Assembly: GCA_001179505.1 (NCBI GenBank)
Contig: CDMY01000337.1
Coordinates: forward strand, 50,158 to 114,157
Reading direction: 5' to 3'
From: Vitrella brassicaformis CCMP3155
Taxonomy: Eukaryota > Protista > Chromerida
DNA length: 64,000 nt
In this document: positions 6,707 through 11,668 of the stretch, one piece after another
Numbering within the stretch: the stretch's first letter is position 1
Layout: the number at the start of each line of letters is the position of its first letter
Made by a program: the position numbers and the translations under genes
Notes under the pieces: generated by a model
The model's database searches: none
What the model saw: only the letters and a program-made list of their open reading frames with translations
What the model was told of the DNA's origin: nothing

Positions 6707-8431
6707 ATGTTGAGACAGACAAGACGGGAAGGGAAGACGGATTCTCTGTGTGTGTGGGTGGGTGGGTGGATGTGCACCGAGACCCAGACACCGAGAATGC
6801 TTCCCATACTTACCGACACCTTCACAATGAGTCCTTCCTTCATCTCAGCAAAAATGGGTGCTCGTGCCGCCCCACTTGAATCATGTACTGCAGTCCTTCC
6901 TTGTCCCTCCTTCCAATCGTCCCCCCCCATGGCAGCTGCTGTGGACTCATTCATGCAGTGTACTGGACACGGACAGCAAAAACTCCTCTCTTTGGCGAAT
7001 GCACCCATCCATCTCCTCTCCATTCATTCCCCCCACACTGACACCATCCATCCACACCCCAAGACACATCCATCACACGCACGCACATCGGTCCGTAGTC
7101 CATGCAATCCCCCACAACACCGGCCCTACTTGCGCAATAGCGCGTTGTAGATAGCAGACAGGGTCCTAGGAGAAGAGATGGCAGGCAGGCAGGCAGGCGC
7201 GACACGTCCCACTGCACGGGTCGCTATCGACGGTTCAGCGTGCGATGTCCCCGAGCTATCCGGTGACTGTTGCTGTCGGCTGCTCAGCCGTCGGAGGGCC
7301 CACTAACACCGCAGGCGTCACCGTCGATTGCAACTGATGCAGCCAGCGGACACACACAACCCACACATCAATCAAGAAGAAATCAGCATATTGCATGTAT
7401 GCATGCAGGCACATATGTATGTATCCATGAATGCATGTTTGCGCTCCCCCAGTCAGTCAGTCAGTCAGTGGAGTTCCATAGAAACTTGTGGAGCAATCAG
7501 TCAGTCAGTCAGTCGATCGATCGATCGACCGGATCGCGGCAAAACAAACGCATTATGCGCCATGCAGATGGCGTTGTTGCGTGTGTCTGTCTGTCTGTCT
7601 CCCTGTCTTATACATACATGGCGGCATCTAGAGGCCTGCCCTGGTGGCGCCAATAGTGCCTACATGTCAGTCAGTCAGCTAGTAAGTAGTATGATCCCCC
7701 ATCCACCCCCCCACCGACTCACCCACAGATGCCATCCACCCCTCTCACACATGAACGAACGCACATACGCTCTGCTCTCCCCCCACACACACGTACGTCC
7801 ATGCAAACATCAGATAGATAGGTACATATACTCACACGAGCCCCCATCTATATATAGTCTTCCTCTCTCCGTCTGCCTCAGCTCACGTTCGCTAACTCAT
7901 CCTTCCTCCCCACCGAAGACACTCACACCGTGACACCACAACGCTGCAGACATCCGGGGCAGGGGATGGTGGGAACCCGATGCGCGCATAGGTGAGGCCG
8001 CCCGCCCGTGTCAAAAGAACGCGCATCTAGACACGCGCGTCGTATGCACATGGATGTGTGTGTCCGGTCGATGGATGAGTCAGAGGTGAGGGGCTGGACC
8101 GGGTGTGTGACGCGCTTCACAATCCAATCAATACTGTCCGTCACTTACATACATGTACAAGAATGTACCCTCTTATATAGACACCACACGCAATCTCTCG
8201 GCTCTATCGTGACCCGAAAAGCCCCCCCGCCCCCCCACCATAACATGCATGTCCCTCTCTCTCACGCACTGCAAAGTCGTCTCTCTTCACTGCATACTTG
8301 CATCTATCTATCTATCTATCTCGATCGCCCCACCCACCCATCCACATGCTCATCCGTGTACTTGTATACCAAACGAAAAAAGGTCGGTCACCAGAGCGGT
8401 CTGGTAGGTCTCGAGCGTCATGAGAAGTCAA

Positions 8432-9870
8432 TCATATACACAGCTCGCTGTGCACCTCGCCCATCTCGAAGATCTGGTGAGTCACCACACACACAGGCAG
8501 AGAGAGAGGAGGGGGTGATCTCCTTGTCTGTCTGCGGCTGGTTGTTGTTGTGTCCGTCCGTGGTGGGCGCAGCGCACCTTCTTGACAACCTGTCGGACTT
8601 TGTCTCTGTGGTCCTGGTTGTTCGGGTCCACATCCAGATGAGTCACGTCAGCCTACACACACACAGACAGACAGCACACATGCGTCTTGATGGAAGGCGT
8701 GTGCTACGCTGTCGTGTGTTGTGTTGTGCTGACCTGCACGCCTATGAGGTAGATGCGCTGTCCGATCATGAGCGGGCTGATGTGCAGCAGGTTCCAGAAC
8801 CGCCGCTTGTCCTTCCGCTGGTTGAGGATCTTCACCACCAAATCGTCACACAAGTGCACTGTCGGCTCCTGCAGAAACATACACAGACAGTGTCGTGCAG
8901 ATGAACGAGATGGATGGCGCGTGTGTCGTCTTGTCTGTCTGCCGCTCACGTTGACGATTCGGTTGATGTATTGCTTGATCTGCCCGATGACGTTCATGTC
9001 GGAGTCTTCGCACTGCAGGAAACGGCAGTTGACCCCGATCACCTCCCAGGGCGAGTACCCTGCCACACACACACAACACACCATCACACACACGCCATCA
9101 CACACGCGGATGGACGGCTCTCGTTGCCCACGTTCGACTGAGTGTGTGCTGGCATACCGGTGAGGTCGCAGAAGCCCGAGCTGACTAGAATGATGGGGCA
9201 GTCCTGCTGGTTGGGGTCGCACAGGATGCTCGAGAATGTGAGCTTGTCGAAGTCCTTCTGCTCCAGCTGGCGGTCCTTCTGGGCCAGCGCCATGCTGTAC
9301 TTCAGGCGCAAATCCTCAACTGAAAACACACACACACAGGAAGGACACACGCACCACAACAGGCACACATGAGTGGCGAACACACGCACACACACACACG
9401 TGTCTGGCGTGCTGTGGCTGTCGTGCGATCCCCACCTTGCGATTCGAGCTCCTTGAGGCGCTTCCGCAGCCCCATGTTCTCCTCGCGCAGCTCCTCCAGG
9501 TTGACCTGCAAAGAACACACAAAAGCGGTAAGAACACTTGGCCTTGGCGCCAAGGCCAGCTGACCTTTTGACTCTCCTTGAGCGACGACGATGCACCACC
9601 TCCCTCGCCCTCGCCTGCCGTCGCCATCATCTGCCCCTCCCCATCTCCTCGGCCGAGCCCGCCGCCAGTGTGCTCATCTAGGTCGGTGGACACGGATCCC
9701 ATCCTGTCGCGGCTCGTGCGGTTCTTCTTGAGCTCACTCATGTCGTTGGTGAGGGGGATGGTGTGCTTCTTGGCACGCGCAGGACGCTCCGGCAGGACGC
9801 TCTGATCAGGCTGACCAGATATCATGTCAGCACGAGGATCACAAGCCTCACACTGTGCACCATCGGCCAT
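8432..9870 (-). CDS. Leucine-zipper + LOV (PAS) blue-light photoreceptor-like protein, 7 exons
   Basis: GT-AG splicing yields ...VNLEELREENMGLRKRLKELESQVEDLRLKY...FSSILCDPNQQDCPIILVSSGFCDLTGYSPWEVIGVNCRFLQ...NQRKDKRRFWNLLHISPL...YLIGVQADVTHL. This carries the LOV signatures NCRFLQ (Cys 9025-9027), NxRKD, FWN and GVQxDVT. Confidence 0.9.
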
Positions 9871-10333
9871 CACTGATGCGCGACCCTCGTCTGCAAGCTA
9901 AGCTCGCAAAGTTGGGAGGGCGAAGGAAACCGCCCCGTTCTACCCATTCCTCGGCCGTAGTCTGAGCCATTCATTTCCTGTTTGCTGGAAATCCCTCATT
10001 GTCCCTTCGGGCCGTTCATCCCGTGAGAATCCATCCATCCCTTTGGTTCGAGTCCATTCCGCCCATCCCTCATCCTCCTGCTGAGGAGCGTAAACGAAGT
10101 GGGGCTTCCCCCGTACACAACAACACCATGTCGTCCTGTTGCCGCCGCGAACCCAAGAAAGTCCCCGAGCCCCAACCAATGAGCCAAGGTGGGCACACAC
10201 GAGAGGGAGAGAGAGGGAGGGAGGGAGGGAGCCCCTCTTTTCATGCAGTGGGGGGACACTGCAGGAGTTTCTCCCGCTCTGTGTTTCTGGTTGTGGTCGG
10301 TCAGACGCGCGGACGAGAGCCTTTGGCGGCCCC

Positions 10334-11668
10334 ATGGCTCCTCCCCCCATGCAGGCCTACCACTCGCTCCCTCCGCAGCAGTTTCCGGCGGGCAAGATGC
10401 CCCCTCCGCCCCAAATGATGCCTGGTCCTCCCTTCGGTGTGCCGCCGCCCGCTCTGAGCCAGAAGGTGCCCATCTATACCGCCCCTGGAGGGCCTCAGCC
10501 GCCCATGCCCATGCCGCCCACAACCAAGCTCCCGCCCACTGGTCCGTCGATGCCCAATCTGTTGGTGCCGCCCTACGCGCCGCCGCCCACCGCCATCCTG
10601 ATGGCCGGCAAGCCCCCCATGCCTGGTGCGGGCGCGCCTCCTGCCATGATGCCGCCTCCACACGCTCAATCGACGCCAATGCTGCCCCGCCCGCAGTCTG
10701 GTATGGTGCCTCCTCCTTCGATGGGTCCGCCTCCCCACCATCCCGCCACTATGGGGGCGATGCAGCCACCACCCGGCCCTCCCGGGCCTCCCGGCCCCCC
10801 TGGGCCTCCTGGCAGCCGTCCGATGCTGATGCCGTTTGTGCCAGCGCATCCGTTGATGATGCCGCCCCACTTGCGCCGCCGTGGGCCGGGTTCTGACATC
10901 CAGGAGTTGATATGGCAGTACGCGACGACCAAGAACGAGCTCAACAGCTGCATGGCGCTGCTGCACGCCATCAACAGCGAGATGGCGGCCCTCAAGCAGA
11001 GCCACTCGTCGCTCAAGGTCATGGTGGACCAGCACGAGGTGATTCTGGGCGGGGGTGCGGGGGCGGGCAAGAGGGAGGCCGGGCTCAAGTTTGTCGTCAA
11101 CGGTGATCCCGATGACCCCGTGGACGTGTACCTGAACAACTTCGTCAAGACCCACAAGGACCTCAACCTCACCGTGGTCAAGATGGACCCGCCCCTCTAC
11201 ACACTCAACGGACAGGAGGCATTCATCACCGAGAAGGACGGCATCGTCGCAATCCGGGACGGAACAGAGTGGAAACCATTCATGGTCACCCCACAGCTCA
11301 GCACGACCCACCAGAGAGCCAGCCAGCCAGCCAGCCAGACACAAACACACCTCTGTCCGTGTGTGTTGGGGTTGGGGTCGTTCAGGAGTTCATAGCTGAG
11401 GCCACGTCAGGTGATACGTTGGAGGCCAAGCCGAAGAAGGCGGCGGTCAAGAAGGCTGCCGCCAAGGGCAAGGCCAAAGCCAAGGGCAAAGCCGCTGCCG
11501 CCAAACCCAAGGCCAAGGCCAAGCCAAAGGTGGGCCCGAATGGGATGGATGGGGTAGGGAGGGAGACATGAATCGCCTCTCATGTGGGTATTGTTTGTCT
11601 GTGTCTGTCTGTTTCAGGCCAAGGCTAAGGCCAAAGCAAAGGGGAAGGCCAAGGCCAAGGCGCGATAG
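10334..11668 (+). CDS. Proline-rich protein with coiled coil, divergent GAS2/GAR-like domain and Lys/Ala-rich basic tail
   Basis: Poly-Pro/(GPP)n N-terminus and a heptad segment. DPVDVYLNNFV...LTVVKMDPPLYTLNG...IVAIRDGTEWKPFMEFI aligns by pattern with the GAR fold (VRVGGGW diverged). Spliced tail KPKKAAVKKAAAKGKAKAK...AR, stop TAG at 11666-11668. Confidence 0.7.

What the first reader, a model, noticed from the sequence alone, without database searches (positions are those of the whole stretch)
8432..9870. LOV photoreceptor with a leucine zipper but no bZIP basic region: candidate light-gated dimerisation or dominant-negative module
Seen: all key LOV residues (NCRFLQ Cys, both Asn, the GVQ Gln) are intact, directly preceded by a clean zipper L-REENMG-L-RKRLKE-L-ESQVED-L. 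The segment just upstream is Gly/acidic (GEGEGGGASSSLKESQK) and lacks the N-x7-R/K-x9-L basic motif. Known: stramenopile aureochromes are bZIP-LOV DNA-binding photoreceptors, and zipper-only proteins can act as inhibitors of bZIP partners. Inference: an aureochrome-like sensor unable to bind DNA, in a probable alveolate, that could sequester partners in a light-dependent way.
Basis: partly seen in the sequence, partly recalled or inferred. Interest (0 to 1): 0.8.

Follow-up and report, generated by a model that had tools for sequence, protein, structure and literature searches.

The report
Leucine-zipper LOV photoreceptor of Vitrella
This is a real, expressed gene of the coral-associated alga Vitrella brassicaformis for a small blue-light sensor (LOV domain) preceded by a pairing helix and no DNA-binding part. 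It belongs to a seven-gene family seen only in this alga, whose closest LOV relatives found are in dinoflagellates, with no sign of descent from the aureochromes it resembles in layout.

Summary
A 7-exon minus-strand gene (8432-9870, all GT-AG) encodes 299 aa: a disordered N-terminus, a four-leucine zipper and a complete LOV domain. Spliced contigs from three public runs carry all six junctions and end 12 nt upstream of the ATG. An in-frame stop lies 30 nt upstream, and no bZIP basic motif occurs in any frame of 7600-10900. A missed basic-region exon is therefore very unlikely.

The organism is Vitrella brassicaformis, a chromerid alveolate. The protein is one of seven Vitrella paralogs. They share Cys after NCRFLQ, a 9-aa insert after helix F-alpha and a J-alpha-like helix. 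Five end in L[C/F]I, five keep the heptad leucines, and two have lost the photoactive Cys.

In LOV-domain trees the family is sister to dinoflagellate LOV proteins (UFBoot 99, SH-aLRT 92). Solved aureochrome LOVs score below YtvA and phototropin LOVs.

So "zipper-LOV without a basic region" is right. "Aureochrome-like" describes domain order only, not shown ancestry. The dominant-negative bZIP idea has no specific support. My best reading is an effector-less LOV sensor, dimerised by its zipper, that signals through light-dependent protein contacts.

First readers of this scan noted the same layout on other DNA of this genome, probably paralogs.

Novelty: new variant of a known kind. Interest is moderate.

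The parts
8432..9870 (-). Coding region of the zipper-LOV gene: 7 exons, 299 aa plus stop. The NCBI model P0001 starts at M16, position 9825.
   Evidence: Spliced model, all GT-AG; identical to P0001 from M16; six joints in contigs of three runs.
9565..9870 (-). Exon 1, aa 1-102: disordered N-terminus.
   Evidence: AF2 pLDDT 44-59 over 10-residue blocks; not conserved among paralogs.
9871..9882 (-). 5' UTR as far as the transcript contigs reach. An in-frame stop lies further upstream at 9898-9900.
   Evidence: Contigs of X1 and X2 both end at 9882; sequence read.
9703..9786 (-). Basic cluster, aa 29-56 (RPARAKK-x12-KKNRTSRDR). It fits the classical bipartite nuclear-localisation pattern. This is an inference only.
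   Evidence: Sequence; similar K/R-x-R-L patches lie upstream of the zipper in the paralogs.
9583..9669 (-). Gly/acidic low-complexity segment, aa 68-96, sitting where a bZIP basic region would be.
   Evidence: The bZIP_1 profile aligns only from its position 35 onward.
9436..9505 (-). Exon 2, aa 103-125: first three heptads of the zipper.
9285..9499 (-). Leucine zipper, aa 105-137 (intron 2, 9320-9435, lies inside). Position d holds L108, L115, L122, L129, A136. Position a holds L105, N112, L119, V126, Y133. The g-e' pairs E111-R116 and R118-E123 are attractive.
   Evidence: Heptad analysis; conserved in 5 of 7 paralogs.
9246..9588 (-). One continuous predicted helix, aa 95-150, running from the zipper into the first LOV strand. 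Introns 1 and 2 lie inside this span.
   Evidence: AF2 helix 80-135 in P0001 numbering, pLDDT 86-97 in 10-residue blocks.
9158..9319 (-). Exon 3, aa 126-179: end of the zipper and the first LOV strands.
8647..9236 (-). LOV core, aa 154-263, spread over exons 3-6.
   Evidence: PAS_9 E 2.7e-12; PDB LOV hits; AF2 plus Foldseek, TM 0.88-0.92 to solved LOV domains.
9025..9027 (-). Codon TGC of Cys191, the flavin-adduct cysteine of GVNCRFLQ. The next-but-four residue, C196, replaces the usual Gly and is invariant in the family.
8950..9059 (-). Exon 4, aa 180-216: NCRFLQC motif and helix F-alpha.
8845..8958 (-). Family-specific 9-aa insert in the loop between helix F-alpha and strand G-beta (about aa 214-224, IVNEPTVHLCD). 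Intron 4 lies inside this span.
   Evidence: Gaps in the phmmer alignments to YtvA and phototropin. Spacing from NCRFLQ to FWN is 50 residues against 41 in canonical LOVs.
8734..8868 (-). Exon 5, aa 217-261: strands G-beta to I-beta with N232, N242 and Q261.
8578..8652 (-). Exon 6, aa 262-286.
8465..8616 (-). C-terminal J-alpha-like helix, aa 274-289. Intron 6 lies inside this span.
   Evidence: AF2 helix 259-274 in P0001 numbering. The motif DVT-x-DVDP-x3-DHRD-x-V-x2-VV is shared with the paralogs and in part with dinoflagellate LOVs.
8435..8446 (-). Conserved C-terminal tail ELCI-COOH. Five of seven paralogs end in L[C/F]I.
8432..8473 (-). Exon 7, coding part (aa 287-299 plus stop).
8348..8431 (-). 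3' UTR as far as the contigs reach.
   Evidence: X2 contig covers 8348-8473 and X8 contig covers 8354-8473.

Best explanation
The gene encodes an effector-less ('short') LOV blue-light receptor of Vitrella brassicaformis. It belongs to a lineage-specific family of seven paralogs, and its LOV domain comes from a LOV clade shared by chromerids and dinoflagellates.

**Shown**
- The gene is intact and spliced as modelled.
- The protein has a disordered N-terminus.
- It has a roughly 56-residue helix carrying a 4-5 heptad leucine zipper with Asn at one a position.
- It has a LOV core with the adduct Cys and the flavin-contacting Asn, Asn and Gln.
- It has a J-alpha-like helix and a conserved C-terminal tail.
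- It has no DNA-binding or enzymatic domain.

**Inferred**
- The zipper forms a parallel dimer. The Asn at an a position and the attractive g-e' pairs favour an in-register homodimer. Heterodimers with the four other zipper-bearing paralogs are also possible, including the two Cys-less 'pseudo-LOV' members.
- Blue light forms the Cys191-FMN adduct, and the Gln261 switch changes how the flanking helices pack. These are the zipper/A'-alpha helix entering strand A-beta, and the J-alpha helix plus tail.
- That change alters the geometry or affinity of the dimer and of its contacts with unknown partners. It would work as in VVD, in aureochrome LOV dimerisation, and in the coiled-coil LOV proteins YtvA and YF1.
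- A bipartite-NLS-like basic cluster suggests a nuclear site of action.
- The output is protein-protein interaction, not direct DNA binding.
For: - **Gene model and expression:**
- **LOV identity and key residues:**
- **Zipper:** the heptad pattern is conserved in five paralogs and lies in a high-confidence continuous helix.
- **No other domain:** Pfam finds only PAS_9 above threshold in this protein and in every paralog scanned (six of the seven; P0181 was not scanned). No basic motif occurs in any frame.
- **Family:** seven Vitrella paralogs share the QC motif, the insert, the J-alpha helix and the LCI tail.
- **Clade:** the family plus dinoflagellate LOVs form one clade, SH-aLRT 99 in the quick tree and UFBoot 99 / SH-aLRT 92 in the careful tree. 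Vitrella is sister to the dinoflagellate sequences.
- **Dinoflagellate origin of relatives:** P0021 is from Pelagodinium beii. Contigs of P0140 and P0108 begin with the 3' end of the dinoflagellate spliced leader (the leader sequence is from my own knowledge of Zhang et al. 2007).
- **Mechanistic precedents:** light-induced LOV dimerisation in aureochrome 1a (PMC4721966). YtvA and YF1 are the best sequence and structure matches.
Against: - There are no biochemical data: flavin binding, photocycle, oligomeric state, localisation and partners are all untested.
- The Arg of helix F-alpha that contacts the FMN phosphate is Lys208 here, and it varies among paralogs (K/A/H/R).
- The Gly after NCRFLQ is Cys, and a 9-aa insert sits near the pocket. 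Chromophore binding or kinetics could therefore be atypical.
- AF2 was run as a monomer and cannot show a dimer.
- The run of four heptad leucines alone arises in about 2 % of shuffles.
- One paralog (P0023) has no zipper at all and another (P0164) has a weak one, so the zipper is not essential to every family member.
- No ortholog outside Vitrella was found. Function therefore cannot be argued from wide conservation.
Confidence: 0.6

Rival explanations
1. One reading: a degenerate aureochrome that kept the zipper and LOV but lost the basic region. It would act as a light-gated dominant negative, heterodimerising with bZIP transcription factors and blocking their DNA binding.
For: - The domain order, zipper then LOV, is that of aureochromes.
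- The zipper has Asn at an a position, as bZIP zippers do.
- There is a sub-threshold bZIP_1 match to the zipper half of the profile, E 0.056 for the whole protein and 0.003 for the fragment.
- Earlier notes of this scan report bZIP genes in Vitrella, so partners could exist (not tested here).
Against: - The bZIP_1 score of 14-18 bits is far below the cut-off of 27.6 and no better than scores for unrelated coiled-coil families. It is absent in all paralogs.
- Aureochrome LOVs are not the nearest LOVs.
- The family is sister to bZIP-less dinoflagellate LOVs.
- No bZIP-LOV protein was seen among the best 150 hits.
- Aureochromes are reported only from stramenopiles (PMC13737086, 10.1101/2022.05.19.492614). 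Aureochrome queries found nothing in the sister chromerid Chromera (PMC10739334).
- Heptad 4 has Leu at d here, whereas aureochromes have a polar residue there (10.1101/2022.05.19.492614).
Confidence: 0.07
2. The long helix is not a stable dimeric zipper. It would be an extended A'-alpha 'signalling helix' that couples the LOV core to the disordered N-terminus. Light would then gate exposure of short motifs there, such as the NLS-like cluster, or drive self-association or condensation of the low-complexity region.
For: - AF2 gives a single uninterrupted helix from aa 95 into the LOV core.
- The N-terminus is disordered, Gly/acidic and carries a bipartite basic cluster.
- N-termini of the paralogs are long, low-complexity and poly-Q or poly-A rich.
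- Only four to five heptads are present, and there is a Gly at a c position.
Against: - The a and d positions are conserved as hydrophobic across five paralogs, while b, c and f positions vary. This is the signature of a packed coiled coil rather than a solvent-exposed linker.
- N-terminal sequences are not conserved among paralogs.
Confidence: 0.2
3. The protein no longer works as a photoreceptor. It would be a PAS-type scaffold or redox sensor that merely retains LOV-like residues, as the two Cys-less paralogs suggest for part of the family.
For: - Two paralogs (P0160, P0181) lost the adduct Cys and the GVQ Gln, yet keep the zipper, C196 and the LCI tail.
- Lys replaces the phosphate-binding Arg.
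- The Cys after NCRFLQ is invariant and is better conserved than the adduct Cys.
Against: - This paralog keeps every residue needed for adduct chemistry, and so do four others.
- Such joint retention at about 45 % identity argues for selection on photochemistry.
Confidence: 0.08
4. Gene-model artefact: the true protein carries a further domain from an unannotated exon or from the neighbouring gene.
For: The assembled contigs stop only 12 nt upstream of the ATG, so the true 5' end is not mapped.
Against: - Contigs from two runs (X1, X2) end at the same base, 9882; the third spliced contig (X8) stops earlier, at 9806, inside exon 1.
- An in-frame stop lies at 9898-9900.
- The divergent neighbour's transcript starts at about 9924-9962 and is never joined to this one.
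- No basic motif occurs in any frame of 7600-10900.
- The paralogs have the same architecture.
Confidence: 0.03

Closest known systems
Aureochromes (bZIP-LOV transcription factors of stramenopiles)
   Same: - A leucine zipper lies N-terminal to a C-terminal LOV domain flanked by A'-alpha and J-alpha helices.
- Light-driven LOV and zipper dimerisation is the likely common working principle.
   Different: - There is no N-x7-R/K basic region, and so none of the aureochrome-specific His in it. No bZIP Pfam match reaches threshold.
- The host is an alveolate.
- The LOV has NCRFLQC instead of NCRFLQG and a 9-aa insert.
- Solved aureochrome LOVs score below YtvA and phototropin LOVs.
- The LOV groups with dinoflagellate LOVs.
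Dinoflagellate LOV proteins: multi-LOV 'NCRFLQP' proteins such as Pelagodinium beii P0021, and single or double 'NCRFLN' LOV proteins such as P0130, P0140 and P0108
   Same: - Same LOV clade (UFBoot 99 / SH-aLRT 92).
- The Gly after NCRFLQ is lost.
- The NCRFLQP group has a similar roughly 10-aa lengthening of the NCRFLQ-to-FWN interval.
- The NCRFLN group shares the post-LOV motif DVTH-x-D-x-D...DH...L/V..VV.
- Pfam finds no known effector domain.
   Different: - They have no N-terminal zipper and no LCI tail.
- Many carry three or four LOV domains in proteins of 1100-1800 aa.
Short LOV proteins that signal by oligomerisation (fungal VVD; bacterial PpSB1-LOV, RsLOV, DsLOV) and coiled-coil LOV proteins (YtvA, YF1)
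   Same: - A LOV core plus flanking helices, with no enzymatic or DNA-binding effector.
- YtvA and YF1 are the best sequence and Foldseek matches.
   Different: - Here the coiled coil is a true four-leucine zipper on the N-terminal side, preceded by about 95 disordered residues.
- It is a eukaryotic, multi-paralog family with Cys-less members.
Zipper-only or HLH-only regulators without a basic region (Id proteins, plant LITTLE ZIPPER, TSC-22)
   Same: A dimerisation helix without a DNA-contacting basic region.
   Different: - None of these carries a photosensor.
- No homology is shown. The only link is a sub-threshold TSC22 hit (E 0.004) for paralog P0017.

Membership tests
LOV domain (flavin-binding PAS, photoactive) | PAS/LOV fold | tested here: met
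   PAS_9 E 2.7e-12, 47 bits against a cut-off of 27. AF2 core pLDDT is above 90 for most of the domain. Foldseek gives TM 0.88-0.92 and rmsd 1.6-1.8 A to CrPhot LOV1 and CagFbFP.
LOV domain (flavin-binding PAS, photoactive) | GXNCRFLQ motif with the adduct-forming Cys | tested here: met
   GVNCRFLQ with C191, codon at 9025-9027.
LOV domain (flavin-binding PAS, photoactive) | Flavin-contacting Asn, Asn and Gln on strands G-beta, H-beta and I-beta, and Arg on helices E-alpha and F-alpha | tested here: inconclusive
   N232, N242, Q261 and R192 are present. The F-alpha Arg (AsLOV2 R467, by my own alignment) is Lys208, a conservative change. It varies among the paralogs.
LOV domain (flavin-binding PAS, photoactive) | Binds FMN and forms the 390-nm Cys adduct in blue light | not testable with these tools
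   Needs recombinant protein and spectroscopy.
Aureochrome | bZIP basic region N-x7-R/K, with His at position 4 in aureochromes (10.1101/2022.05.19.492614) | tested here: not met
   No such motif occurs in the protein or in any frame of 7600-10900. Gly/acidic residues occupy the place. The bZIP_1 profile matches only its positions 35-62 at 14 bits against a cut-off of 27.6.
Aureochrome | Leucine zipper directly N-terminal of a C-terminal LOV domain | tested here: met
Aureochrome | LOV domain groups with aureochrome LOV domains | tested here: inconclusive
   - Aureochrome LOV chains (5dkk, 5a8b, 6i20, 3ue6) score 58 bits against 71 for YtvA with the single protein. With the family profile they score 73-78 bits against 98.
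- No bZIP-LOV protein was seen in the best 150 hits.
- The family is nested with dinoflagellate LOVs.
- No aureochrome sequence could be put into the tree, so a direct test is missing.
Aureochrome | Occurs in stramenopiles | tested here: not met
   The host is Vitrella brassicaformis, an alveolate. Aureochromes are reported as unique to stramenopiles (PMC13737086).
bZIP transcription factor | Basic DNA-contact region contiguous with the zipper | tested here: not met
Chromerid/dinoflagellate LOV clade (defined here) | Monophyly with dinoflagellate LOV domains, and loss of the Gly after NCRFLQ | tested here: met
   Quick tree of 305 rows: SH-aLRT 99. Careful tree of 95 rows: UFBoot 99 / SH-aLRT 92.
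Vitrella zipper-LOV family (defined here) | NCR[FL][LM]QC, a 9-aa insert between F-alpha and G-beta, a J-alpha-like helix, an L[C/F]I C-terminus and an N-terminal heptad helix | tested here: met
   This protein has all five features. The family forms one clade with UFBoot 97 and SH-aLRT 62-87.

The most novel reading that the evidence does not exclude
Vitrella runs a private light-signalling network of seven LOV paralogs, five of them with the zipper. Photoactive members and Cys-less 'pseudo-LOV' members pair through their leucine zippers and through a conserved C-terminal LCI tail that docks near the flavin pocket. This would give a natural light-switchable zipper that regulates nuclear partners without touching DNA. 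It would have arisen independently of aureochromes from an ancestral LOV shared by chromerids and dinoflagellates, and it would be directly usable as a compact optogenetic dimeriser.
Probability: 0.2. Interest if true: 0.65.

Novelty: new variant of a known kind. Interest (0 to 1): 0.45.

Why it matters
**Light sensing near the apicomplexans**
- Chromerids are the photosynthetic relatives of apicomplexan parasites, and their light sensing is almost unstudied.
- The only paper in the searchable library that links LOV and Vitrella is a clock-gene survey that found no aureochrome or VIVID homolog in Chromera.

**What this adds**
- A seven-member zipper-LOV family gives Vitrella a candidate set of blue-light receptors.
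- It reaches the aureochrome layout (dimerisation helix, then LOV) without a DNA-binding region. Its LOV lineage is shared with dinoflagellates.
- It is therefore a case of convergent or parallel domain layout, not of gene transfer from the plastid donor.

**Possible uses**
- The Cys-less paralogs offer a natural experiment on how 'blind' LOV partners are used.
- A roughly 200-residue natural zipper-LOV-J-alpha module could be useful as an optogenetic dimeriser if light does change its pairing.

Tried and rejected
- **Missed basic-region exon: rejected.**
- **bZIP ancestry of the zipper: not supported.** Only this paralog gives a sub-threshold bZIP_1 hit. The others hit assorted coiled-coil families.
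- **Word-index protein searches: uninformative.**
  - Searches missed known paralogs (one search recovered only P0160; for example, none found P0018).
  - Their blanks therefore say nothing about orthologs.
- **Exhaustive representative search: incomplete for Chromera.**
  - Full-length matches were Vitrella paralogs only.
  - Because that library is clustered at 50 % identity, a close Chromera ortholog could be hidden.
- **Scan of JGI metagenome and transcriptome contigs with family peptide patterns: nothing relevant.**
  - Only generic PAS genes turned up.
  - L008, which seemed to cover zipper plus LOV, is a bacterial PAS sensor without the LOV motif.
- **Aureochromes in the tree: not possible.**
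  - No tool returned an aureochrome sequence as a usable reference, and I did not type one from memory.
  - I relied instead on PDB score ranks and on the published statement that aureochrome LOVs cluster with chlorophyte LOVs (PMC13737086).
  - Chlorophyte phototropin LOVs are the weakly supported next neighbours of the alveolate clade (78/53). A more distant common origin of aureochrome and alveolate LOVs is therefore not excluded.
- **ESM Atlas look-up:** it gave only PAS_9 clusters.
- **Open + strand ORF 8008-8904 over the gene's 3' part:** this is a chance ORF. All transcript joints are CT..AC on the + strand, that is GT..AG on the minus strand.
Full report
**1. The gene is real and modelled correctly**

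Reading the minus strand of 8100-10400 and joining seven exons gives a 900-nt ORF. The exons are 9565-9870, 9436-9505, 9158-9319, 8950-9059, 8734-8868, 8578-8652 and 8432-8473. The six introns are GT-AG and 59-116 nt long, and the protein has 299 aa.

Public runs X1, X2 and X8 hold contigs that skip exactly these six intervals. On the + strand the joints read CT..AC. Run X6 holds the unspliced DNA.

The spliced contigs of X1 and X2 both end at 9882, 12 nt upstream of the ATG at 9870. An in-frame TAG lies at 9898-9900. The divergent neighbour's contigs begin at about 9924-9962 and are never joined to this transcript. No bZIP basic-region pattern occurs in any of the six frames of 7600-10900.

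**2. Identity**

The product equals, from Met16 on, the protein P0001. NCBI lists it as 'unnamed protein product [Vitrella brassicaformis CCMP3155]' and UniRef as 'PAS domain-containing protein'.

**3. Anatomy**

- Pfam sees only PAS_9 above threshold, at E 2.7e-12.
- An AF2 model built on a 63-row alignment has mean pLDDT 80.9. In P0001 numbering, residues 1-79 are disordered, 80-135 form one continuous helix (pLDDT 86-97 in 10-residue blocks), 139-248 form the LOV core, and 259-274 form a C-terminal helix. Add 15 for the 299-aa numbering used below.
- Foldseek superposes the core on solved LOV domains at TM 0.88-0.92 and rmsd 1.6-1.8 A.
- The LOV residues are complete: C191 in GVNCRFLQ, R192, Q195, N232, N242 and Q261.
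- Three things are unusual. Cys196 replaces the Gly of NCRFLQG. Lys208 replaces the phosphate-binding Arg of helix F-alpha. There is a 9-residue insert between F-alpha and G-beta, so that NCRFLQ to FWN spans 50 residues against 41 in canonical LOVs.
- The helix carries L108, L115, L122, L129 and A136 at d positions, and L105, N112, L119, V126 and Y133 at a positions. The g-e' pairs E111-R116 and R118-E123 are attractive.
- Upstream lie a Gly/acidic stretch (aa 68-96) and a basic cluster RAKK-x12-KKNR. The cluster fits the classical bipartite NLS pattern, which is an inference.

**4. A Vitrella family**

The exhaustive representative search returned 9026 LOV hits. Only Vitrella proteins match across the zipper, the LOV and the tail.

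| Protein | Accession | Length | Note |
|---|---|---|---|
| P0017 | CEM35433 | 563 aa | zipper, intact LOV |
| P0018 | CEM11163 | 327 aa | zipper, intact LOV |
| P0164 | CEM37188 | 307 aa | weak zipper |
| P0023 | CEM00112 | 176 aa | no zipper |
| P0160 | CEM02517 | 326 aa | lost adduct Cys and GVQ Gln |
| P0181 | CEM40024 | 415 aa | lost adduct Cys and GVQ Gln |

P0160 and P0181 still keep the zipper, C196 and the tail.

Shared family marks are NCR[FL][LM]QC, the insert (…VQMCDDLVV…), the post-LOV motif DVT-x-DVDP…DHRD-x-V…VV-x2-FFE, and a C-terminus L[C/F]I in five of seven. The heptad leucines at 115/122/129 and hydrophobic a positions are kept in five of seven paralogs. Asn at a-position 112 is kept in three.

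None of the paralogs has a basic region or a bZIP hit. Their helices hit assorted coiled-coil families only. First-stage notes of this scan had flagged zipper-LOV genes on other pieces of this genome. That lead is confirmed by the search above.

**5. Relatives outside Vitrella**

Pfam scans, a motif scan and look-ups show two groups of nearest relatives:
- long proteins with three or four LOV domains and the motif NCRFLQP (P0021 from Pelagodinium beii, and others);
- proteins with one or two LOV domains and the motif NCRFLN (P0108, P0129, P0130, P0140, and others).

Transcript contigs of P0140 and P0108 begin with CTCAAG and GCTCAAG. That is the 3' end of the dinoflagellate spliced leader, a sequence I know from Zhang et al. 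2007.

A 305-row LOV-domain tree puts the seven paralogs in one clade (SH-aLRT 87). That clade sits inside a 74-row clade with these sequences (SH-aLRT 99). A careful 95-row tree gives UFBoot/SH-aLRT of 97/62 for the family and 99/92 for family plus dinoflagellates. Vitrella is sister to all the dinoflagellate rows. That is the pattern expected for vertical descent from a common ancestor of chromerids and dinoflagellates.

WRKY-LOV proteins have the highest percentage identity outside the family, at 49-50 %. They fall outside the clade and are already described (PMC8017926).

**6. Aureochrome question**

Aureochromes are defined by a bZIP with the N-x7-R/K signature next to a C-terminal LOV. 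In aureochromes the signature has a His at position 4. They are reported only from stramenopiles (10.1101/2022.05.19.492614; PMC13737086). Aureochrome queries found nothing in Chromera (PMC10739334).

- The basic region is absent here.
- The bZIP_1 match covers only profile positions 35-62, at 14 bits against a cut-off of 27.6.
- Solved aureochrome LOVs rank below YtvA and phototropin LOVs, both with the single protein (58 against 71 bits) and with the family profile (73-78 against 98 bits).
- No bZIP-LOV protein turned up among the best 150 hits, by a basic-region regex over all and Pfam scans of about 30.

I could not place aureochrome sequences in the tree, so the kinship test is indirect. 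What can be said is this: the zipper-LOV order is shared, membership fails on the defining basic region, and nothing points to aureochrome ancestry. Whether the zipper was gained in Vitrella or lost in dinoflagellates cannot be polarised.

**7. Mechanism**

*Shown:*
- an intact LOV core;
- a conserved heptad helix that runs straight into the first LOV strand;
- a J-alpha-like helix and a conserved tail;
- no effector domain.

*Inferred from established LOV biology:*
- The precedents are adduct formation, the Gln switch, and repacking of A'-alpha and J-alpha. Examples are VVD, YtvA/YF1 and the aureochrome 1a LOV (PMC4721966).
- The protein is a zipper-held dimer whose geometry or partner binding changes in blue light. 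It possibly acts in the nucleus and possibly in mixed dimers with paralogs, including the blind ones.

Confidence in this general reading is about 0.6. The dominant-negative bZIP reading is about 0.07. A non-dimeric signalling helix with a gated disordered N-terminus is about 0.2.

**8. Verdict**

This is a new variant of a known kind: a short LOV receptor with an N-terminal leucine zipper, in a lineage-specific chromerid family. It is of moderate interest to photobiology and optogenetics, and all functional statements still await biochemistry.

Noticed in passing
window 9882-10325: The LOV gene sits head-to-head with a + strand gene. That gene's transcript contigs start at about 9924-9962, it has a 5'UTR intron at 10187-10302, and it starts a Pro-rich protein at about 10325. 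The two transcript ends are only about 40 nt apart, so a very compact bidirectional promoter is likely.
   Followed up: partly
P0021, P0032, P0086, P0052, P0147 (related proteins, not in the window): These are dinoflagellate proteins of about 390-1800 aa (clusters of P0021, P0032, P0086, P0052 and P0147). They carry two to four LOV domains (motif NCRFLQP, roughly 10-aa insert) and no Pfam effector domain apart from one UVR motif. They are sister to the Vitrella family. I found no description of them in the papers I read.
   Followed up: partly
P0160 and P0181 (Vitrella paralogs on other contigs): Two paralogs have lost the adduct Cys (GSPYSLM and INTRCLF) and the GVQ Gln. They keep the zipper, the Cys after the motif and the LCI C-terminus. 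They are candidate 'blind' partners of the photoactive members.
   Followed up: partly
window 9010-9012 (C196) and 8435-8446 (ELCI tail): The Cys that replaces the Gly of NCRFLQG is invariant in all seven paralogs, so it is better conserved than the adduct Cys. The AF2 model shows isolated beta-bridges at N190 and Q195 and at L297-C298 of the tail. The tail may therefore dock beside the flavin pocket. Confidence there is low (pLDDT 65-69) and the contact could not be inspected.
   Followed up: no
P0118, P0143, P0006, P0008 (metatranscriptome proteins): WRKY-LOV proteins are the most similar LOV domains outside the family by percentage identity (45-50 %). They lie outside its clade. This domain combination was already reported by Coesel et al. 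2021 (PMC8017926).
   Followed up: yes
P0130 (Logan contig, probably dinoflagellate): This is an N-terminal NCRFLN LOV followed, about 170 residues after it, by a Cys/His cluster (…CTPCSFHCYSFMGCNKGESCNFCHMDH…) that looks like a CCCH-type zinc finger. Pfam reported only PAS_9.
   Followed up: no
window 7600-8220: A separate transcribed stretch lies downstream of the LOV gene. Contigs of all four runs laid (X1, X2, X6, X8) cover parts of about 7600-8220 and are not joined to the LOV transcript, which ends near 8348. It was not analysed.
   Followed up: no
window 8655-8675, 9066-9081, 9380-9399: CA/GT-rich microsatellite-like stretches inside the introns attract many unrelated contig ends and one false 708-nt joint in run X6. 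They are repeats, not alternative splicing.
   Followed up: partly
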